Part shown: positions 21,505 to 64,000 of the stretch, piece after piece | Numbering within the stretch: position 1 is the stretch's first letter | Layout: the number at the start of each line of letters is the position of its first letter | NCBI RefSeq assembly: GCF_001194135.2 | Contig: NC_068984.1 | Coordinates: forward strand, 3,454,906 to 3,518,905 | DNA length: 64,000 nucleotides | Source of the DNA: Octopus bimaculoides | Lineage: Eukaryota | Direction: 5' to 3' | Position numbers and translations under genes: made by a program | Notes under the pieces: generated by a model | Database searches by the model: none | Told to the model about the DNA's origin: nothing | The model's input: only the letters and a program-made list of their open reading frames with translations

Positions 21505-21597
<93 letters not shown>

Positions 21598-21809
21598 AGT
21601 GCGCCTGTGTTTGTTTCCCCCGTCACTACTTGACAACCGGTGTTGGTGTGTCTACGTCCTCGTAATCTAGCGGTTCGGCAGAAGTGACCGATAGAATAAG
21701 TACCTGACTTAACTAAGTACTGGGGTTGGCTCATTCGACTAACAATTTTTGAAGGTAATGCCCCAACATGGCCGCAGTCTAATGACTGAAAGAAGTAAAA
21801 GATAAAAGA
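21342..21809 (+). mobile_element. Full-length tRNA-derived SINE family C with an internal (TA)n(GT)n block
   Basis: tRNA-like head (tggctgtttgg ... gggtgcagtccc), CORE-like ccttgggcaggtgtctt, internal microsatellite, and tail ending gtaaaagataaaaga. Fragments also at 7962-8002(-), 36338-36430(+), 42332-42545(-) and 43097-43200(-). Confidence 0.85.
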
Positions 21810-21850
21810 TAATAATATATATATAACAATACATATATTTATTATTTATA

Positions 21851-22033
21851 CAGCATAAAGATAAGAACTACTAATAGTTTCATGCATTGGAGACGCGTGT
21901 CAAGGCAGATCTTTATAGCACGCCTTGTATCTTCAAGCAATTTTCAGGCTCACACAAGTTGTATTATAAAAACCTGCCTAGACTCGCCTCTCCACTGCAT
22001 GAAACTATTAGTAGCTCTTATCTTTATACTCTG
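21851..22033. mobile_element. Tc1/mariner-type MITE (183 bp)
   Basis: Imperfect inverted arms of about 70 bp (cag..taaagataaga.ctactaatagtttcatgca.tggaga.gcg) flanked by TA at 21849-21850 and 22034-22035. Confidence 0.8.
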
Positions 22034-22927
22034 TAAATAATATATATAATATGTATTGTTATATTCATCATTATATATGTAATTTGTTGTATTGTATTGC
22101 ATTTGACTCATAAGTCAATCCCTAAAAAGTTCCTCGTGCCCCAGTCTATGGTACACTGACCAAATATCTTCCACATCTTTTTTAGTCAACATTTATTACG
22201 ATGGCCTCCACTTTGCACGACCTGATTATTCATTCATCGCCCAAAACATTTAGCTTCTGTTATTTGAAAAGAAAATATTACTGTTTGAGTAAAAGTCGAG
22301 CGCACTACTTTCATAAGAGAAGGAATAAAAACTGAAGAAATCAAATTGTACAAAGAAAGAAGCTATAAGGAAGGAACTCGTGCTAGAGAAATGTATCTCG
22401 CTGCTCGAAGATGAACTATTTCTGACTCATCAACTGAAATTTAATTTAAATTTGATTTAAATTTATATTTCGAGAACACTTTAAAAATAACATTAGTCTA
22501 AACAGCGATAGAATCTAAATAAACGGTTGTGTTAATACCCGAACAGGAGACTTCATTTTGAAATAATGTATAATACACATGTACAATAATGGAATCTGCA
22601 GTTGGAGATGGGTTGAAGGAATTAAAGATAATAAGGAAGAGATTAAAAAAAAAAAAGCCTTTGAAATGAATATCAACATGAAGAATAATAAGTGTAAAAG
22701 GAAGACTAAAGCTATCAATGAGAAATAGAAAATGAAACAAGTTAAAATGTAATTGTTATCAATGCCTAAGTTGTTAACAGCGGAAATTTACGACAAGAAA
22801 GTCATTAAGAATCATTATAACTGTCATCTGTAGATGTAGTTAAACTGTAGCAACAGTTGCATTATATATTTATATACTTGTTTAATTTATATATCTATTA
22901 TAATTATTGTTTTTGTTATTATCACAT

Positions 22928-54227: not shown

Positions 54228-54268
<41 letters not shown>

Positions 54269-57149
54269 GAGAGAGAGAAACGATTTCTCTATTCTGTCTT
54301 GAAACAGAAATACTCATTAGAGGGAGACGGTGGAGGCGGGGGATAAATTAGTGAGGTGGATGTAGGGAGGGAGAAGAGGAAGAAACTGAGATGAAGAGTG
54401 AGAGAGAGAGAACGAGGTATGTGGTAAATGGAAAGGTGAACAGTAAATAAAAACAAACCGGAGAGGAAGTACGAAAGAGAAGGAAGAGGTGGACTTTGTT
54501 TAAAGTGTTTGTATACACACACACACACCTGCCAACCTATTACTATGAATGAAGGTATGAGAATGTGTGTGTGAGTTTGCGAAGTAGTGCAAGGGACAAA
54601 GAGTAAAACTTGGGAAAAAAAAACATTCGTTACACGTGCGCACGCGCACACACACAATGAGAAAGAAAAAGAAAGAAAACCAAGCATGGTGTAAAAATCG
54701 AAGCTAGTTTCAAAGTGATCGACTAAAGATTTAGTAATTATCTGCTGAGGCGATTTGTTCTTTAGTTGTTGTTCATTGTATTGCCGGATGTTGGGACAAT
54801 TTCCTTGATATATTGCATTTCAACTGATGCCAACCAATTCCAGCAACAGCTGGCACCGAACACTTATCACCAACATCTCCTTACGCCCCACCCCTCCCCC
54901 CACGCTTCCTTAATGGTGGACAGCTAAAGAATGCATGCAATATATAAATGGTTGCACGTATGTGGGTATGTGAGTGCGTTGCATAATCCAAATAACTGGA
55001 TAAAACTCTACCGGAGGTATTGAGTACTCTTTGTCTAGTTTGTGAAACGAAAATGCGCATCTGTATATGTATAGCTGGGTAGACCGAAATTCTCTTAAAC
55101 CTTAGTCTCAAAGTTCTCTTCGTAGCCTCGCTCTCAGTAACCAACTAAACCCTCACCATCCACTCTGAACAGATGCTCAGCCCTCAACCGTTGCGATTTG
55201 TAACCCTGTGAGTTCATGTATTTGAGCGATTCACATTTTTTTTTTTCTTGGAGAGTTTGTTGCGTGGTCTAGGATTCGGGAAGTACCGATGAGCCAGTGC
55301 TGCATTGTTAGTGGTCGGTCTTATTACAAGAACGATTCATTTTAATCTTTTCTTTCATATAATCACGATAATGGTGTGTCGTATGTAAAACTCTTTCTTG
55401 AGAAAGTTTTTCTACGCTTGTTCCGCAATGATATCTGATGTAAATAAAGTTAACATTTCAATTTTAAAAAAATTACTTTACGTATATCTTTAAATTTTAC
55501 GGCACGCAGACTACCATTCTCTTTGTCTGTTTCTCTCTTTCCTCTCACTCTTTCTCTCCCTCTCCCCCTCTCCCCCTCTCTCCACATGTAAATTCTGAGG
55601 TTTCTTGTTTAGAGGAATAGTCAGACTACTTAAATATGCTCCTTCGGGTTATTTTGTCAACGTAATGAAATCATTGACTCGTTGTCTTAAAACAAGTCTA
55701 CATTACATTCCAAAAAATTAACAGTAAATTCGAGAACCATCCCAATAATTTTTATTCTGATAAAACAACTTTATAGTTTACATGAAGTATTGTTTATCTT
55801 ACAGTATTACCTATATATGTGTGTGTGCGCGCGTTGTGTAGATAGAATGCCTTTGATAGCACTTCTTCACCTATAAAACAGGATATTTACTATTTTACAC
55901 TTTACTCATGCAAAGCAAACAGTATTAATTATAATATTACAAATTTGGGATTTCACCAATAGGACCACAACTTCAATTTCAAGACAACCTTATTTTCTGG
56001 AGTACACATAGAAAGTTTCAACTTAGAGCGCTCCGAGTTAAAGCGTCGTCCAAATCAATTTTACCTTTCATCCTTTCAAGGTTAATAGAGCAAAATACCC
56101 ACCCAAGGTGGTGGCTTGGCGGAACTGTCAGACTGGCGGCATTTATTCCGCCTGTTTGTTTACTGAGTTCAAATCCGGCCATGGCTAAATTAAGAGGTAG
56201 ACTTAACCGTAGACTTAATGTTAACACTACTATCTGGCCCCTTGGGTCCCTTTAACTCTGTTGCTAACGTTCAAACCTTCCTCCCTCTCGACCACCTATT
56301 AACGCTGAAAGCCTTGTGATTGGTTTTATGGACACTCCCTTTCCTCGTGGTAAAAAGATATTTTTAAAAAAACTACACAAAGGTAGCGTTAAAAGCAAAA
56401 ATTTACAGCAAACTTTTATTGAAGATCTTTCAAAGAAACCAAAACGGATTCAGGAAAAATCGATCAACTATCATACGGATCTTAGAAGTTGGGAGAATTA
56501 TTGAAGAGACCAGGAGAAAAAAATCTACCAGAAGTTTTATTGTTTGTTGACATTCCAAGTTTTCAACTCCGTATATTGAAGTGAAGTGGAGCAAATATTT
56601 CTTGCATGCGCTATGCCAAAAGATACAGAAGTAATGATGCTCTAGAGCTAAAGTTCGATCACCGAAAAAAATAAAAACACAGATTTCTTCGACATCAATG
56701 CAGGTGTCTTAGAAGTCATTACTCCAGAACCATACCAATTTCGCACCTGCCTCGATGACGTCCTTTGTATCTCTAAAGACAAAAAGACAAAATTAGACAT
56801 TTCATTTCATGGTTATAGAATCATCCTCCCCTTTGCTATCCAATTGCAACAATAACAGATACAGATTGTGCTAAACATGGCGTTCTATTGACAGACCGCG
56901 TCTCAAAAGATACCTCACCCTTTTTTTACATGACCATGAGAAAACATCAGGAGATATCATTCGTCATTTTAAGTGAATATATCTGTTCCAGTCAGGATTC
57001 AAGAAGCACAGTTAATCAAAACAGTCTAAATTTTGTAGATACTTTCCTAAACTTAGATTGCATCATCACATCTATAGAAAAGGATGTTGAAACTCATCTC
57101 GGCAAAAGTTTGGTGGCCTCGCTGCTATCTGGAATTCATCGATTTCAAA

Positions 57150-57447
57150 GGATCTTGATTTCAATTGGATCTGTGAGAATTTCTTGGTCAACAAGAAAGC
57201 AATGGACTATAAGGATAGCATCAAGAATCTACTGAAATGTTACTTAACAATAATGGGTTATCGCATGTCACTGGAAGTTCACTTCTTGGACTCTCATCTG
57301 GATTTCTTCACAGACAACCTTGGAGCAGTGTCTGATGAACATGGGGAAATATTTCACCAGGTCATTAGTGCTATGGAGAAATGGTACCAAGGCTTCTGGA
57401 ATGACAACATGTTGGCTGACTACTACTGGACACTTTACCGTGATCAA
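57150..57447 (+). mobile_element. Chapaev3-like transposase C-terminal remnant
   Basis: ENFLVNKKAMDYKDSIKNLLKCY..MGYRMSLEVHFLDSHLDFFTDNLGAVSDEHGEIFHQVISAMEKWYQGFWNDNMLADYYWTL. Confidence 0.65.
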
Positions 57448-57470
57448 CATTTGCTAGTGTGTGTGTGTAT

Positions 57471-57584
<114 letters not shown>

Positions 57585-57655
57585 TTGTAGTAGTTATGTA
57601 CTTCCATATATTTGTTCAGGTTATCTACCGTAATCCATCATAGTCCACTGTTAAT

Positions 57656-57942
57656 CCGTCGGTTACGACGACAAGGGTTCCAAGTGATCTGATCAACAGA
57701 ACAGCCTGCTCGCGAAATCAACGTGCAAGTGGGTGAGTACGCCACAGATACGCAGGTAGATTCAGCTTGACACAGAATGTGACAAGGCTGGTCCCCTTTG
57801 AATTACAGGTACAACTCACGTTTTCCAGCTGAGCGAACTGGCGCAATATGAAATAAAATGTCTTGCTCATGAACATAACGCACCGCCGGGAATCGAACTC
57901 AGGACCTAATGACTGAGTCGAAGACCCTAACCCTATGCGCCT
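57656..57942 (-). mobile_element. Composite SINE: tRNA head + CORE-like domain joined directly to a family D tail
   Basis: On + reads gggaatcgaactc (B box, reverse complement), tgtcttgctca..aaca and cagctgagcgaactgg, next to gtgacaaggctgg...gtcggttacgacgac. Confidence 0.75.
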
Positions 57943-58394
57943 TCACCTTGATCTACTAAACAAGCGTCTACAGTCATTTCAAACCCTCGGTGATTTAGCG
58001 ACAAACAATTGTAAATCTTTGCATAATTATAAACATATTAAATGGTCACGTGATTTAATCACAGCATTCCATTGGTGAGAAAGTTTTCGGGGAATTGCGT
58101 CAAAACTTGTTTCCAACCTATCAAAAGACGTCTGTTTAGGCTCTTTCTTTGTTTTATAAGAACTTCTGACTTCATAGACTTTCTCAGTGGTCAGCACTTT
58201 TACAGAACTCGACAGAAAAATCTTCCTTCCAACTTCTTCCATTGACAAAAGACGGACAGTCAAACAGCTACCTATTTCCGTTTTGCTATTTTGTTTTGCT
58301 TGACCCGACACCGACCTCTGCGACTATTGATAACCCGGAAAAATAACACGTTATACTGGTAATCATACCGCCAAGTACTCAAGCCTGGAATCTC

Positions 58395-58404
58395 TCTATC
58401 TCTT

Positions 58405-58435
<31 letters not shown>

Positions 58436-58615
58436 TTCTCTCTCTTTCTTTCTCTCTCTTTCTTTCTCTCTCTCTCTCTCTCTCTTTCTTTCTCTCTCTT
58501 TCTTTCTCTCTCTTTCTTTCTCTCTCTTTCTTTCTCTCTCTTTCTTTCTCTCTCTTTCTTTCTCTTCCTTTCTCTCTCTCTTTCTCTCTTTCTCTTTCTC
58601 TCTCTCTCTTTCTCT
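58395..58615. repeat. Complex (CT)n/(CTTT)n polypyrimidine tract
   Basis: About 220 bp of essentially C/T only; it explains the ERKKER pseudo-ORFs. Confidence 0.95.
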
Positions 58616-58771
58616 CATATTTATGTCTTCCACTATCTCCTTTGACCAAGGATGCTGCAATTTCATTCACGTAGCTCCATTCAGATACGAAGCAGACTCC
58701 CTTTTGTGTTCTTGCACTTCCAACTGGAAGATGGAAGTTAATTATTAATGGCACCAGCAGACACAATTTAG

Positions 58772-59045
58772 TTTTGCCGTTTTAAAAATGAAATATTTAC
58801 ACACATCCCTGTCTCGAGCAAAAATGACTGGAGAAATTAATGAAGAATTAGAAAGGAAAAACCCTCCGAATTTCTAAGAAGGAATAAGCGTATGTTAGCT
58901 TTATGTTCTTATATAAAGCTAACATACGCTTATTCCTTCTTAGAAATTCGGAGGGTTTTTCCTTTCTAATTCTTCATTAATTTCTCCAGTCATTTTTGCT
59001 CGAGACAGGGATGTGTGTAAATATTTCATTTTTAAAACGGCAAAA
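58772..59045. repeat. Perfect 133-bp inverted repeat with an 8-nt spacer
   Basis: 58772-58904 is the exact reverse complement of 58913-59045; the spacer is gttcttat. Confidence 0.97.
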
Positions 59046-60489
59046 AAAAACATTCTTCTTCCTTTGCTTTGCACCATACATGCAGGTTAACCTTGCAGCC
59101 GCAGGGGACCACAGTCAATTGACCGACTCGATGAATGAGTGCAGTAAATACTTCTTTTCTACACCAACGGCTGCGAATATCCAGATTATTTTTCGTTTCT
59201 AATTCGTCGGTAAATGCTTCTCTTAAACTGTTAACTGAGCAGCAGGAATAACAGATTTAAACCTTAACAGCACGATAGGAACATTTAGAACAACTTTTTT
59301 GTTTTTGTATCTCATCCTCCTCAACGTTCCAAAAATTCTTCCAGAGACAGCCTTGCGCTTCTCGTGATGCATCAAAGGACAGATGTTGATATTCTCACCA
59401 ATTTGGGATTAATGCTCAGCTCTGTGTTCCACCTTGTACTTATTGACCAGCATTCATGCACAAACGCTGACCAATGAACACAGCCAGGTCACCTGACAAA
59501 TCCCCAATCAGCTATCACTTTTAATTATTTAATTAATAGCTTGAAATGTTTTTTAGTCGACGCAGAGGTAAATTTTTGTCTCCAAGTTTTCTGTGATCGA
59601 AGACCTACAATCGTGACTTTAGAGGTAGTTGATTATTCACGTGATCTATAGGCCACCGGCTCCCACCCCCACCTCATGTTAATAGGTCGATGACTCTGGA
59701 TTTTAATTTTCTACTTTTTTTGTTTGCTCGTCTTTTTGCTTTTTATTAATTTTGTTTTTTGTCTTTCGACCAGCCTAGCTCTGTTTTAAAAACAGATTTC
59801 CGCCATTTCAAATTGCTGGTGGTTATCAAACATAAGCTTATAGACATCACGACTTATCTAACGTGGAATCAATATTTGGATAGATTCTTCCAGCTCTGTT
59901 TTCTTCGATTCTGCTGCTTCAAACGCAGTGCTATTCTACGCGAGTTTAATAAGAAACTTTCTCACCCCTTCAAATTTTAACCACCCGTTTCTTCGAGACC
60001 TCGTCGCTTTGCTGCTGACCAACTGAAAATCGCCAAGTAAAAATTTAGTCATACGTTACAATTTGGTATCATTAAATCCTCGGACATTAACTGGTCTTCA
60101 TGTCTCCACATAATTCCTATGAAAATCTCAGGTGCCTGGCACCCCTATGGGAATTATTAGGTTTTTAGTACTCATAGTGTACAGTTGTCCATATCTAAGA
60201 CTTTTCGTTTTGTTTTGGGGGGTGGGATCAGATATTGCCTGAAAATTGATATTGCCTAGAACTATAATCAGACACCAATCGAATAGGTGATGACGACATT
60301 CCTTGGTTTCTTTGAATTTTTAAGAATGAAATTTGATTTGAAAGAAACTCCGAAATCCTTTCAACTGAGCATGGAAGTTATCTGCACGGTGCATTTCGTT
60401 TACGTCTTTATCGATGATTTCGTAATTACCAATTCTCATTAGGTTGTGTGTGTTTGAGAGAGAGAGAGATTTTCTCTCTCTCAAGTTTT

Positions 60490-60590
60490 CTTTGATGTAA
60501 CGAAAGCCTTTGGCACAGTGAATCGATATGGAGCGAGGAGAATCGTAAAAATGTTGGGCTTTGCACCAATCATTAGTTTTTTATTCACAT
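60490..60590 (+). mobile_element. Very short RTE-like RT fragment
   Basis: FFDVTKAFGTVNRYGARRIVKMLG resembles FIDLTKAFDTVNREGLWKIL. Confidence 0.45.
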
Positions 60591-61122
60591 GTTCGCTCAA
60601 AAGCTGCTTGAAGGCCTACTTCAGCATAAATGGATGGAGTAAAATGTTGTGAAATAATTTATCTGCGTTTACATATTCGAAAAACTCAGTTTCGGATGAG
60701 CTGTTGAATTAGTGAAAGCGGAATTTCGATGGTGACGTATTAAATTTGTAGAATAAAACTCTTTGATCTAGAGTTGTCACTAACTTGTATGGAGTCCTCT
60801 TAGGATTTCTAGTCTCCTTCATACTTAATTTAAAATGTTCATTATATATATATATATATATATNNNNNNNNNNNNNNNNNNNNNNNNNNNNNNNNNNNNN
60901 NNNNNNNNNNNNNNNNNNNNNNNNNNNNNNNNNNNNNNNNNNNNNNNNNNNNNNNNNNNNNNNNNNNNNNNNNNNNNNNNNNNNNNNNNNNNNNNNNNNN
61001 NNNNNNNNNNNNNNNNNNNNNNNNNNNNNNAATAATGTGTTGGGGTTAACGGCTCAACATGTTGAAATGACTGAGAGCGGGAAATAAACCAACGCCCTTA
61101 GGTACAAGCAAAATATATTTAT

Positions 61123-62007
61123 CCAAGGGGCTACCCAAAAGAAACCGGAATTTTGCAGTATGATTTCATTCACTTAGTTTTACAAGTTTACACTTTTATC
61201 CCCTTCAAAGTATTCTCCATTTGAAGCAATGCTTCAGTCCAGACGGGTTTTCCATTGTTCGAAGCAGTGTTGGAACTCTTGCGAATGGATGCCTTTTAAC
61301 GCCTCTATCGGTTTTTTTGTTTTTGTTTTTTATTTTTTTACGTCTTTCACATCTTCAAATTCCGTAGCACCAGTTTTCGTCACCAGTGATGACTTTCGAA
61401 AAAAGGTCCGAATCAATTTCCAACTGTTCTTTCAGTTCCCAATATGAATTTAGTCATGATTGTTTTTGAGTAAGCGAGGCACAATTTTTGCTGCAATTCT
61501 TTTCATTCGCAATTCCTCGCTCAAAATTCGTTGGCAGGAGTTCCAGGACACACCAGTCATATCAACAAGTTCGTCAATTGTTCATGAATTTTCATGATGT
61601 TTTTTGTTCAGGCGGTCGACGGTTGCCTTGAAAGCGGTTGGTCCTCAAGCGACAAGTGACCATTCCTAAAGTGTGAAAACCACTCGTAAACTTGTGTTTT
61701 GCTCAAGGCAGCGTCCTTGTAAGCTGTTTGAAGCATGATAACTGTTTCGGACTCCCTTTCCCTCAACAGAAAACAATTTTATGGAAGCACGCTGTTCCTT
61801 CGTTTCACCCATCATAAAAATCGACAAACAGGGGAGAAGTGCTGCAAAACAAAGACGCACCACGTGACAATATGACTCTACTGAACAACAACGGTCGGCA
61901 GGCTGATGCCTGAGGATTGCACCAAGTGCCTTCTAGCGCCAGAATCCAGAACTACAACGGGTGTGACCCACAGAGAACGTTTCCAATTACTTTTGGGTAC
62001 CCATCGT
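61123..62007 (-). mobile_element. Internally deleted mariner element
   Basis: MGETKEQRASIK..ETVIMLQTAYKDAALSKTQVYEWFSHFRNG..SLEDQP, VITGDENWCYG, then a jump to FQHCFEQWKTRLD*SIASNGEYFEGDK. Degenerate TIRs (gg.tacccaaaag.aa..ggaa) at both ends. Confidence 0.85.
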
Positions 62008-63161
62008 GTCTCGGGTCCGAGAGTTGCAATGCAACGGTAAAAGAAACACAATTATGACCCTACCACATTTATTTGATATGACCACCTCTGTTTCGAATCA
62101 CAGCCTTAAGTATAGGTGCGAATGCTTCACTCACGGCACGCAGCTGTTCTTGCGAAATCAAAGCCTATTCCTGGCGTAGTTTTGCTTTTAGAGCGCCGAG
62201 CTAAGTATGAAAAGTTCTCGAGACCCTCATCTCCAAAATGAACCAAACAGAAAAATCCAACAGGTTGAGATAGGGGCTTTTTGAGGGCCAGACATCCTTG
62301 TCTATGAACGATGGAATGTTTTTTTCTGAATCCAGTGTTTGGGGCTGTGGGGTGGTGCTGATTCCTATTGGAGGCTTCGATGTGCGCCTTGAAAGTGCTC
62401 ATTCGCCTATGGAAGCAGTTCAGCTTCCAGAATGTCGCTTATGTATCGCTGGGTGTTAATTCTAACACCCGAGATCTTCCAGTGGTTGTCACAGCCACCC
62501 AAACCATAATTGACAGTGGATTTTGACGTTGATTTACGAGTCTACTCTCGGCGGAGTCAGATACACTCCAAAGTCGGTCATTCTGGTGGTTTGCTGTTTG
62601 TTTGATGTCAAATTACTTTTGAACAGTGAACACCAGTTAGGGCAGCGTGCCTTCCGCAATCTGACTCGGGATAAGACGACTTCACTCCAGTCTCATGGCT
62701 TTATGAACTTGCATGAGCTCATGATGGCGGATATCTTGTAGAGCTGGGTCCTGATATTTTCCTTCAGCACTCGATACATCGATGTTTGACTTAATTTGGA
62801 TCTGGAAGCCAGTTTTCTGACGGAACAATGATAATTTCACCGTATCTTTTCTCTGGTACTTTGGTAAGCTGAGGGGTCCGCACACTTCTTTTTCGGTCAC
62901 GTCCAGGTCAATCAGCGGTGGAACCAGTCTCTTGAAAATCTTTCGACAATTTTAAACTTTTTTGTTATAGCTGTACTGCTTTCGTCCCCTTTGTGGAGGG
63001 TCTATAGCCATTATCTAATTTATAAATCTGAATTTAATTCCTGAAACAAAAAAGACGACATACTAAGCTTTTATGATGATGTATAATTTTTATATTTTAT
63101 CATATTTATTGATAGTAACTAAAGCCCGAAATTTCGGTTGCCTTTATTTCGAGACACCCTG
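62008..63161 (-). mobile_element. Second DD37D (maT)-like transposon, decayed
   Basis: Minus frames give RKLASRSKLSQTSMYRVLKE, LVFT..FDIKQTANHQNDRLW and NPLSIMVWVAVT, plus a W..GPQKAP/LNLLDFSVW-type segment. The terminus caccctg+TA lies at 63155-63163. Confidence 0.7.
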
Positions 63162-63242
63162 TAGACATGAACATGTCTGGACGGACATGTATGTGTTTGT
63201 ACGTACGTACATACAAACATACATACATACATACATGCATAC

Positions 63243-63933
63243 ATCATCAAAGCAGTACCAACAACCGGATTACTAACTCCCACTTCGAAGGGTATGCGTT
63301 TGCAATCCAAGAACAAGAAATATCGACCAAATACTTGATGTACAAAGGGAACAGAAATGCAGGAAAAGCAGTAAAGCGTGACAACCGATGCAGACTTTGT
63401 GGAGTTCACAATGATGATATCACCCACATCATAAACAGTTGTCCGAAAATGTCATCACGGTATTATTTACCGATGGGACATGATGTTGTAGCAAGGACAC
63501 TATATAATGAGGTCCGTCGGAAGGAAAACCTCAATGAAATGTAAACACAATAGACCTCATTTGGAGAAGAGAAACTCTGTACAGTTGCAGAAATTAGCTG
63601 CCCATCAGATATTAACATAAAGTTAAAGATCAGCGAAAAAGAGAATACCTATGCTGAATTATTGAGAAATCTGCAGTTACTTTATCCAGATTAGAAGTTC
63701 AGGTAATTATTAGAGCACTGGAATATGTAACACACTGCCTAAATACCAATCTTGAGAAACTAGGCTTCTCAAAAGGAGAAAGCTGATTTGAAGACTACAG
63801 ATCTAATCCAACACTGGAACTGTAAAAATCTGTAAAACTTTCCAGAAGTTTATCATCTAGATATATATGAGCATGTCTAGATATGCAACTATATGCATGA
63901 GAATACACACATAAAGCAAAACATTACAAATCT

Positions 63934-63940
<7 letters not shown>
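63243..63940 (+). mobile_element. R4 family 1, 3' fragment with internal deletions
   Basis: NNRITNSHFEGYAFAIQEQEISTKYL and CRLCGVHNDDITHIINSC; closely similar to 12120-12945. Preceded by (ACAT)n at about 63205-63242. Confidence 0.9.

Positions 63941-64000
<60 letters not shown>

What the first reader, a model, noticed from the sequence alone, without database searches (positions are those of the whole stretch)
58772..59045. Perfect 133-bp fold-back hairpin in otherwise decayed DNA
Seen: the two arms match with no mismatch over 133 bp around an 8-nt spacer, while almost every other repeat here is visibly decayed. I see no TA or other TSD and no second copy in the window. Inference: it is a very recent fold-back duplication or young MITE, a selected hairpin-RNA locus, or a library/assembly chimera. 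If transcribed it would be a long perfect dsRNA. Such RNAs are substrates for Dicer and ADAR (established), which is relevant if this is a coleoid cephalopod with extensive A-to-I editing. Perfect palindromes of this size also extrude cruciforms and are usually unstable.
Basis: partly seen in the sequence, partly recalled or inferred. Interest (0 to 1): 0.7.

Follow-up and report, generated by a model that had tools for sequence, protein, structure and literature searches.

The report
Young perfect fold-back duplication, octopus-like DNA
The 274-bp perfect hairpin is really in the assembled sequence and is most likely a very recent, probably functionless inverted duplication made in one step by a DNA-copying slip, although an assembly error cannot be excluded without the raw reads.

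Summary
Arms 58772-58904 and 58913-59045 are reverse complements at 133 of 133 positions around the 8-nt spacer GTTCTTAT. Chance expectation is about 1e-77. No other repeat in the window exceeds 91% identity, and there is no second copy of the arm.

The window is a short-read-style draft scaffold of an octopus-like genome. The hairpin sits in a field of decayed transposon fragments.

- **Transposon (MITE):** no target-site duplication in any register and no related copy in the window.
- **RNA gene:** no curated RNA family passes threshold. A survey of 32 mollusks found no dedicated endo-siRNA pathway.
- **Virus, plasmid or bacterial origin:** no match.

The palindrome is interstitial. It has two novel junctions inside 6.6 kb of gap-free sequence. 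The outer junction lies in an A9 run, giving up to 4 nt of microhomology. An older, decayed fold-back of similar size lies at 21812-22074.

Best reading (about 0.5): one snap-back or template-switch event copied about 129-133 nt of adjacent sequence in inverted orientation. It is under about 3 My old and neutral. Assembly or library artefact is about 0.2. A TSD-less fold-back element or hairpin cDNA is about 0.15-0.2. A functional hairpin RNA is about 0.05 or less. Reads, other assemblies and RNA data were out of reach.

The parts
58772..58904 (.). Left arm of the fold-back (133 nt). It is purine-rich on the + strand (0.564), which is atypical for its neighbourhood, so it may be the inverted copy.
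   Evidence: 133/133 complementarity. (only 1.5% of local 133-nt windows are this purine-rich).
58905..58912 (.). Non-palindromic spacer GTTCTTAT, the turn-around point. T2-A7 can pair, leaving a 4-6 nt loop.
58913..59045 (.). Right arm of the fold-back (133 nt). Its + strand composition (purine 0.436) matches both flanks (0.45 and 0.453), so it may be the ancestral orientation.
59042..59050 (+). A9 run that spans the outer junction between the right arm and the unique right flank. The last 4 A of the arm are ambiguous between copy and flank, giving 0-4 nt of junctional microhomology. It is one of only 7 A>=9 runs in the window.
   Evidence: P that a random position starts with AAAA = 0.013, and with AAAAA = 0.0046.
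58623..58771 (.). Unique left flank between the (CT/CTTT)n microsatellite (58391-58616) and the left arm. It ends in AATTTAG. There is no TSD partner on the right.

Best explanation
This is a real and very young inverted (fold-back) duplication. In one mutational event a DNA 3' end stopped copying its proper template. This happened either at a repaired double-strand break (snap-back synthesis, as in synthesis-dependent MMEJ / polymerase-theta end joining) or at a replication fork (intra- or inter-strand template switch). The end turned back after an 8-nt loop and copied about 129-133 nt of the immediately adjacent sequence in reverse complement. It then rejoined the original duplex, probably through the A-run at 59042-59050.

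The product is a perfect palindrome in non-coding, transposon-derived DNA. It has no function of its own. Its expected consequences are structural: it can extrude a hairpin or cruciform, it is prone to deletion, and it would form a 133-bp dsRNA only if the locus happens to be transcribed.

**Shown:** the structure, its uniqueness in the window, its perfection against a decayed background, the absence of transposon hallmarks, and the interstitial two-junction geometry.

**Inferred:** the mechanism, which arm is ancestral, and the neutrality.
For: 1. The copy lies directly beside its template, with an 8-nt turn and 133/133 identity. This is the signature of snap-back or template-switch synthesis. 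Template switching is documented to create perfect hairpin stems in a single event (PMC10710096, PMC5453318, 10.1101/2021.04.15.439925). Snap-back synthesis followed by microhomology pairing is documented for Pol theta and SD-MMEJ (PMC4912351, PMC5728401, PMC2943611).
2. The outer junction falls in an A9 run, giving up to 4 nt of microhomology (chance 0.5-1.3%). An enzymatic rejoining step would leave this. An assembler, which needs overlaps of k-mer size, would not.
3. One arm matches the strand composition of both flanks and the other does not. This is as expected if one arm is native sequence and the other its inverted copy.
4. There is no TSD, no second copy, and no protein, RNA-family, viral, plasmid or prokaryotic match. 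Nothing points to a mobile element or a gene.
5. A decayed fold-back of similar geometry lies at 21812-22074, with arms of about 120 nt at about 84% identity and a 25-nt spacer. Such structures therefore arise and then decay in this genome. An old, diverged one cannot be an assembly artefact.
6. The palindrome lies inside a 6.6-kb gap-free block (54228-60863), 1.8 kb from the nearest N run.
7. Zero mismatches bound the arm-to-arm divergence below 2.2% (95%). With the octopus rate implied by PMC13282606 (JC 0.09 = 25 My), that is under about 3 My.
Against: - No reads, second assembly, second haplotype or sister-species locus could be reached. Neither the reality of the palindrome nor the one-arm ancestral state has been seen directly.
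- At 133 nt it is longer than the template-switch events documented in the cited primate work (28-83 nt). It is also much longer than typical Pol-theta templated insertions.
- The centre shows almost no priming microhomology beyond what the arms themselves hide (only T-A plus a G/T mismatch in the spacer).
- The two polarity hints disagree. Composition says the right arm is native. The microhomology at the right-arm/flank junction is most simply read with the left arm as native. Both hints are weak.
- Closed gaps are invisible in the final sequence. 'Not near a gap' is therefore only partial reassurance.
Confidence: 0.5

Rival explanations
1. Assembly or library artefact. The sequenced genome carries only one arm. 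The second arm was created by chimeric fold-back molecules made in vitro (snap-back during end repair or PCR) or by a gap-closing or contig-joining error in a short-read draft assembly.
For: - The window is a draft scaffold with 10 N runs of estimated size, nearly all at microsatellites. Gap closing was clearly part of the pipeline.
- A 226-bp microsatellite lies 155 bp to the left.
- Absolute identity of the arms is what an artefact gives.
- Library preparation is known to make chimeric reads that join inverted copies of the same locus (PMC10908179).
- Perfect inverted repeats this long are extremely rare in finished genomes. The longest in human, with spacer <=8, has 140-bp arms (PMC13155455).
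Against: - The palindrome is interstitial. It needs two independent novel junctions (spacer to right arm, and right arm to flank), each supported by reads. The usual fold-back artefact has one junction and runs to the end of the read or contig.
- No N run is nearer than 1.8 kb.
- The outer junction shares only 4 nt, far below any assembler overlap.
- Library chimeras occur at low allele fraction (PMC10908179). They should not outcompete the true path at normal coverage.
- An old, diverged fold-back of the same size exists in the same window.
Confidence: 0.22
2. A fold-back transposable element: a young MITE, or another non-autonomous element made almost entirely of its terminal inverted repeats, newly inserted here.
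For: - The size (274 bp) and the all-TIR architecture fit MITE or fold-back elements.
- The genome has recently active DNA transposons. A repeat annotation of O. vulgaris lists 65 single-insertion 'MITE' families of about 200 bp that are <=2% diverged (PMC13282606).
- A mariner-like transposase remnant lies 2.6 kb away, at 61611-62612 on the - strand.
- The 21812-22074 fold-back has AT-rich ends and a possible TA duplication.
Against: - There is no TSD of any length in any register within +/-12 bp, including TA, TTAA, TWA and 8-9 bp types.
- There is no second copy in 64 kb or in 21 kb of O. bimaculoides DNA. That only excludes very high copy numbers, above about 1e5.
- The arms are not similar to any transposon remnant in the window.
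- The arms contain no subrepeats like those of Drosophila FB elements.
Confidence: 0.12
3. A reverse-transcribed hairpin cDNA. A transposon reverse transcriptase copied about 129 nt of the 3' end of a polyadenylated RNA at a nick. The cDNA then snapped back on itself (self-primed second strand, or an extreme form of twin priming). This left T4-body'-loop-body-A9.
For: - The right arm runs into an A9 tract, and the left arm starts with the complementary T4. This asymmetry is expected if priming was on a poly(A) tail at the right end.
- Reverse-transcriptase-bearing elements are abundant around the site. They include Ty3/Gypsy-type pol remnants at 59990-60440, a non-LTR RT fragment at 60458-60649, and a Penelope-like ORF at 41080-41568.
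Against: - There is no TSD.
- There is no AATAAA or ATTAAA in the right arm.
- No source sequence was found.
- The composition hint suggests that the right arm belongs to the local sequence.
- A-runs of 5 or more are common here, about 5 per kb on both strands.
Confidence: 0.06
4. A functional hairpin-RNA gene (an hpRNA or giant-miRNA-like precursor, or a dedicated ADAR substrate), kept perfect by selection or by arm-to-arm conversion.
For: - If transcribed, it would fold into a 133-135 bp perfect duplex of -234.5 kcal/mol.
- Below-threshold hits to long-hairpin miRNA models appear.
- Coleoids edit RNA heavily (established knowledge).
- Template switching is a documented source of new hairpin RNA genes (PMC10710096).
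Against: - All Rfam hits are below their gathering scores. They occur on both strands and to unrelated plant and animal families. They therefore reflect 'any long hairpin' and not homology.
- Known hpRNAs and miRNAs tolerate and carry mismatches, so perfection indicates youth.
- No arm-encoded peptide matches any protein. No target-gene origin is visible.
- A survey of 32 mollusks, including O. bimaculoides, found no dedicated endo-siRNA pathway (PMC12479628).
- The locus is in decayed transposon DNA, with no sign of a transcription unit.
Confidence: 0.04

Closest known systems
Template-switch mutations (TSMs) that create perfect inverted repeats in one replication error (Loytynoja & Goldman 2017, PMC5453318; Monttinen et al. 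2023, PMC10710096)
   Same: A reverse-complement copy lies immediately next to its source, with perfect pairing at birth and a short loop. No transposon hallmarks are present, and it arises in non-functional sequence.
   Different: At 133 nt it exceeds the 28-83 nt events described there. Membership is therefore inferred, not shown.
Snap-back synthesis in alternative end joining (SD-MMEJ / polymerase-theta templated insertions; PMC2943611, PMC5728401, PMC4912351)
   Same: An inverted templated insertion is copied from the sequence adjacent to the break. It is followed by rejoining at a short microhomology, here up to 4 A.
   Different: Typical insertions are a few to a few tens of nucleotides. 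Here there is about 130 nt and no visible priming stem at the turn beyond the arms themselves.
MITEs / fold-back transposable elements
   Same: Size of about 270 bp, almost entirely inverted repeat, in a genome with recently active DNA transposons.
   Different: There is no target-site duplication, no further copy in the DNA available, no match to a transposase-bearing relative, and no subrepeats.
Drosophila-type hpRNA loci and long invertebrate miRNA hairpins (PMC10292708, PMC12553114)
   Same: A long inverted repeat able to give a long RNA duplex.
   Different: Those loci are transcribed and processed, carry mismatches, and often derive from a target gene. Here none of that is shown, and mollusks appear to lack the siRNA branch (PMC12479628).
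Fold-back artefacts of library preparation and assembly (PMC10908179, PMC6218980, PMC12870357)
   Same: Perfect inverted duplication of a stretch of about read length with a short turn.
   Different: Those artefacts have one junction, are rare per locus, and end with the molecule. This one is interstitial, with a second junction back into unique sequence.

Membership tests
Template-switch / snap-back inverted duplication | The inverted copy lies directly adjacent to its template, separated by a short loop | tested here: met
   8-nt spacer between the arms
Template-switch / snap-back inverted duplication | The copy is identical to the template at formation, with no TSD or other transposon hallmarks | tested here: met
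   133/133 identity. No TSD.
Template-switch / snap-back inverted duplication | Microhomology at the point of return to the original template | tested here: inconclusive
   0-4 nt (AAAA) within an A9 run. Chance is 0.5-1.3%. The polarity conflicts with the composition hint.
Template-switch / snap-back inverted duplication | The ancestral or allelic state carries exactly one arm | not testable with these tools
   No reads, other assembly or sister-species locus could be retrieved
MITE / fold-back transposon | Target-site duplication flanking the terminal inverted repeats | tested here: not met
   No direct repeat >=4 nt exact, or >=7 nt with 1 mismatch, in any register within +/-12 bp. The outermost bases TTTT/AAAA are not TA, TTAA or TWA.
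MITE / fold-back transposon | Multiple dispersed copies | tested here: inconclusive
   No copy in the 64-kb window or in 21 kb of O. bimaculoides DNA. This excludes only copy numbers above about 1e5. A genome-wide search was not possible.
MITE / fold-back transposon | Termini shared with an autonomous element | tested here: not met
   No similarity to any transposon remnant in the window, including the mariner-like fragment at 61611-62612
hpRNA / endo-siRNA locus | Transcribed and diced into 21-22 nt small RNAs | not testable with these tools
   No expression data. The literature reports no dedicated endo-siRNA pathway in 32 mollusks (PMC12479628).
hpRNA / endo-siRNA locus | Arms derived from a target gene | tested here: not met
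   All reading frames of 58620-59650 give no protein match at E<=1e-3 among 5.8 billion proteins
Curated miRNA or other RNA family (Rfam 15) | Score at or above the family's gathering threshold | tested here: not met
   No hit at gathering thresholds. The best sub-threshold hit is MIR5048 at 95.6 bits against 160. Hits occur on both strands and to unrelated families.
Fold-back assembly or library artefact | A single novel junction, with the palindrome running to a contig or read end or abutting a gap | tested here: not met
   Two junctions. The palindrome is embedded in the gap-free block 54228-60863, and the nearest N run is 1.8 kb away. Closed gaps cannot be seen.
Fold-back assembly or library artefact | Reads from independent libraries or long reads lack the second arm | not testable with these tools
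   No read data available
Viral terminal hairpin (parvovirus/densovirus-type endogenous element) | Adjacent viral genes, or similarity to viral sequence | tested here: not met
   No protein hits in the flanks. The arm 28-mer is absent from IMG/VR. No phage or plasmid similarity.

The most novel reading that the evidence does not exclude
The hairpin is real and transcribed. It would be a newborn, still perfect 133-bp dsRNA locus in a coleoid, created in one step by template switching. It would then be a natural substrate for the expanded ADAR system (hyper-editing or ADAR titration) or for Dicer in an animal thought to lack endo-siRNAs. That would catch the de novo birth of a long hairpin-RNA gene at time zero.
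Probability: 0.04. Interest if true: 0.6.

Novelty: new member of a known kind. Interest (0 to 1): 0.2.

Why it matters
If real, this is an unusually large and clean example of a one-step inverted duplication. Its arms of 133 nt are close to the longest perfect short-spacer inverted repeat reported in the human genome (140 bp, PMC13155455). It would show that template-switch or snap-back events can build more than 100 bp of perfect hairpin at once in a cephalopod genome. Such hairpins are the raw material from which hairpin RNAs can evolve, and they are potential fragile sites.

If it is an artefact, it is a useful flag for quality control of the assembly. Either way it does not, on present evidence, point to a new gene or system.

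Tried and rejected
**Looking for independent copies of the locus**
- Exact-protein look-ups of ORFs touching the hairpin and of another window ORF found nothing on record.
- I concatenated all 23 stop-to-stop frames of 58620-59650 into one query against 5.8 billion proteins. There were no hits. This means no other assembly of this locus is reachable, and neither the arms nor the flanks derive from a recognisable coding sequence.

**Looking for the arm elsewhere**
- Two different 28-mers were absent from JGI metagenomes.
- One 28-mer was absent from 185k prokaryotic genomes and from IMG/VR.
- blastn of 58623-59400 found nothing in plasmids or phages.
- There is no similarity in a 21-kb O. bimaculoides locus.

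**RNA-gene reading**
- Rfam at gathering thresholds gives nothing.
- At E<=1 there are only structure-driven hits, on both strands, to unrelated long-hairpin miRNA models, all below threshold. I rejected these as evidence.
- There are no tRNA-like sequences, so no SINE head.

**Other checks**
- Pfam on nine neighbouring ORFs gave nothing.
- The 30-nt, 80% match between the arm and 59189-59218 was rejected as chance (E = 0.05).
- A heterozygous-inversion mosaic was considered and rejected. Neither haplotype would contain the spacer-to-right-arm junction, because the spacer is not palindromic.
- A PacBio missed-adapter fold-back was rejected. The 8-nt spacer is not a SMRTbell adapter, and the scaffold has short-read-style gaps.
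- An shRNA vector or adapter origin was rejected. There is no similarity, and the CTCGAG site is inside the arm, not at the loop.

Full report
**1. The observation**

The sequence at 58772-59045 is a perfect fold-back.
- Arms: 58772-58904 and 58913-59045, reverse complements at all 133 positions.
- Spacer: GTTCTTAT, non-palindromic.
- First mismatches: 58771/59046 and 58770/59047. Three further T/A pairs beyond them come from the A-run on the right and are not part of the repeat.
- Chance: with the window's composition the per-position match probability is 0.264, which gives about 1e-77 for the arm.
- Folding: -234.5 kcal/mol as RNA (z = -31.8) and -158.7 kcal/mol as DNA (z = -42.9). Two spacer positions (T2-A7, plus G/U in RNA) extend the stem, leaving a 4-6 nt loop.
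- No other copy of the arm or of either flank exists in the window, by blastn with word size 7.
- All other repeat pairs in the window are 72-91% identical. If the arms were as old as the youngest of these, the chance of zero differences would be 3.6e-6.

**2. Where it sits**

The window is 36% G+C and rich in microsatellites. It contains ten N runs of 100-758 bases, nearly all abutting microsatellites or homopolymers. This is the signature of a short-read, scaffolded and gap-closed draft.

A retrotransposon ORF at 11538-12602 has its best match, at 72%, in Octopus bimaculoides LOC106878562.

The hairpin lies in the gap-free block 54228-60863. Its neighbours are all transposon debris:
- A (CT/CTTT)n microsatellite at 58391-58616, with the hairpin starting 155 bp to its right.
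- The C-terminal part of a widespread transposon-type protein family at 57091-57460.
- Frame-shifted Ty3/Gypsy-type pol remnants at about 59990-60440 on the + strand. The motifs are RPRRFAADQLKIAK, HIIPMKISGAWHPYGNY and YVFIDDFVI, identified from my own knowledge of these families.
- A non-LTR RT fragment at 60458-60649.
- A mariner-like transposase remnant at 61611-62612 on the - strand.

No reading frame of 58620-59650 matches any protein. Nine neighbouring ORFs have no Pfam domain.

**3. What it is not**

*Not a conventional MITE.* No direct repeat of >=4 nt exact, or >=7 nt with one mismatch, flanks the element in any register within +/-12 bp. The outermost bases (TTTT...AAAA) are not a palindromic TSD such as TA or TTAA. 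The arms resemble no transposon remnant in the window and carry no internal subrepeats. Absence from 64 kb excludes only families of more than about 1e5 copies, so genome-wide copy number remains open.

*Not a known RNA.* Rfam gives no hit at gathering thresholds. At E<=1, many long-hairpin miRNA models from unrelated plants and animals hit the centre of the palindrome on both strands, all below threshold. The best is 95.6 bits against a required 160. Any perfect hairpin would do this. There is no tRNA-like head.

*Not viral, plasmid or bacterial contamination*.

*A Drosophila-type hpRNA role is unlikely a priori.* A survey of 32 mollusks, including O. bimaculoides, found no evidence of a dedicated endo-siRNA pathway (PMC12479628). 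Perfect pairing is not what selection on such RNAs produces. It is what a very recent origin produces.

**4. Real or artefact?**

This could not be settled directly. Exact-protein look-ups and the concatenated-frame search showed that no independent assembly of this locus is reachable with the tools. No reads are available. The sequence itself gives four indirect arguments for reality.

1. **The palindrome is interstitial.** It needs two novel junctions: the turn at 58904-58913, and the return to unique sequence at 59045/59046. Fold-back artefacts of library preparation or long-read sequencing have one junction and continue to the end of the molecule (PMC10908179, PMC12870357, PMC6218980). In short-read libraries they occur at low allele fraction (PMC10908179).
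2. **The return junction shares at most four bases (AAAA) with the flank.** That is far too short for a computational overlap. It is typical of enzymatic microhomology use. The chance that a random position starts with AAAA is 1.3%, and with AAAAA 0.46%.
3. **The nearest N run is 1.8 kb away**. Closed gaps are invisible, however.
4. **A second fold-back of the same size class lies at 21812-22074.** Its arms are about 120 nt with indels, at about 84% identity, around a 25-nt spacer. An old, diverged palindrome cannot be an assembly product, so this genome does generate such structures.

I put reality at roughly 0.75-0.8 and artefact at about 0.2.

**5. How it most likely arose**

The geometry is that of template-switch or snap-back synthesis: an inverted copy directly beside its template, a short turn, perfect identity, and a return through microhomology.

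Replication-associated template switching is documented to create perfect hairpin stems in one event (PMC5453318; PMC10710096; 10.1101/2021.04.15.439925). In break repair, snap-back synthesis followed by annealing of the new 3' end to a microhomology on the other end is the SD-MMEJ / Pol-theta mechanism (PMC2943611, PMC5728401, PMC4912351).

Which arm is ancestral is uncertain.
- **Composition favours the right arm as native.** On the + strand the right arm has purine fraction 0.436, like both flanks (0.45 and 0.453) and the local mean (0.461 +/- 0.057). The left arm, at 0.564, is matched by only 1.5% of local 133-nt windows.
- **Microhomology favours the left arm as native.** The A-run microhomology at the right junction is most simply explained if the left arm is native and the right arm is the copy.

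Both hints are weak.

Two features are atypical. At 133 nt the event is longer than the 28-83 nt events documented in the primate work. The turn shows no obvious priming stem beyond what the arms conceal.

Zero differences in 133 nt bound the arm-to-arm divergence at 2.2% (95%). With the octopus calibration JC 0.09 = 25 My (PMC13282606), that is under about 3 My. This holds unless arm-to-arm correction keeps it perfect (PMC8604942 describes such homogenisation for short inverted repeats).

**6. Other real-sequence alternatives**

- **A TSD-less fold-back element remains possible (0.12).** O. vulgaris has many recently active DNA transposons and 65 single-insertion 'MITE' families of about 200 bp (PMC13282606).
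- **A hairpin cDNA also fits the T4...A9 asymmetry of the outer ends (0.06).** This would be target-primed reverse transcription of a short polyadenylated RNA followed by self-primed snap-back. It lacks a TSD, a polyadenylation signal and a source.

The orthologous or allelic site would separate these readings from local duplication. One arm present means local duplication. No arm present means foreign insertion.

**7. Function and consequences**

Nothing indicates a function.
- **As DNA:** a perfect 133-bp palindrome with a 4-8 nt centre is cruciform- and hairpin-prone. It is expected to be unstable (established knowledge; PMC3855049, and PMC12708500 for the replication problems at such structures).
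- **As RNA:** it would be an ideal ADAR substrate, but only if transcribed, which was not testable.

**8. Verdict**

The MITE and selected-RNA readings are not supported, and an artefact is not excluded.

This is a new instance of a known kind of mutation, not a new kind of element. It is notable mainly for its size, which is near the 140-bp maximum for perfect short-spacer inverted repeats in the human genome (PMC13155455). Interest is low to moderate (0.2).

Noticed in passing
window 21812-22074: A second, decayed fold-back of about 263 bp. Its arms are about 120 nt with small indels, at about 84% identity, around a 25-nt spacer (21929-21953). The outer ends are AT-rich, with a possible TA duplication, so it may be an old Tc1/mariner-type MITE or an old fold-back duplication. 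The sequence just to its left (21574-21833) belongs to a repeat family that is also present at 1906-2118 and 42326-42568 and in the O. bimaculoides locus L001.
   Followed up: partly
window 40983-41054 and 42124-42195, with ORF 41080-41568 (+) between them: Inverted 72-nt repeats at 92% identity, 1.07 kb apart. They flank an ORF whose motifs (LAFLDVLI..., LPYVKGLSEKIQKI) look like the RT-to-endonuclease linker of Penelope-like elements. Those elements are known for inverted pseudo-LTRs. Pfam gave no hit for this ORF, so the identification rests on my own knowledge.
   Followed up: partly
window 61611-62612 (-): Frame-shifted mariner-like transposase remnant. It has an N-terminal helix-turn-helix-like peptide (YEWFSHFRNGHLSLEDQPLSRQPSTA) and downstream catalytic-region peptides.
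   Followed up: no
window 59990-60440 (+) and 60458-60649 (+): Ty3/Gypsy-type pol remnants with frameshifts (RPRRFAADQLKIAK, HIIPMKISGAWHPYGNY, YVFIDDFVI). A (GT)n/(GA)n microsatellite follows directly, and then a non-LTR RT fragment (FFDVTKAFGTVNR). This is a junction of two unrelated decayed retroelements.
   Followed up: no
window 57091-57460 (+): The C-terminal part of a transposon-type protein (…HFLDSHLDFFTDNLGAVSDEHGEIFHQ…). It has 224 homologues at 52-80% identity, mostly unnamed metagenome proteins plus Lepidoptera, mosquito, spider and pseudoscorpion proteins. No Pfam domain was found. The family is very widespread and uncharacterised.
   Followed up: partly
window 11538-12979, 36833-37230 (-), 63119-63972: Three copies, 78-88% identical, of the same retrotransposon 3' region. 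The best-preserved copy encodes a 354-aa ORF that is 72% identical to O. bimaculoides LOC106878562. That protein is annotated as a gene but is evidently a transposon ORF.
   Followed up: partly
window 45168-45528 and 46195-46569: A direct repeat pair of about 370 bp at 87.6% identity, about 1 kb apart. It could be the LTRs of a small or solo-like element, or a local duplication.
   Followed up: no
window N runs (5750, 7234, 11168, 23828, 26900, 27776, 34706, 47555, 53470, 60864): Nearly all assembly gaps abut microsatellites or homopolymers, and the gap sizes are estimates (100-758). The 226-bp (CT/CTTT)n array at 58391-58616 was nevertheless assembled through. This suggests a closed gap close to the hairpin.
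   Followed up: partly
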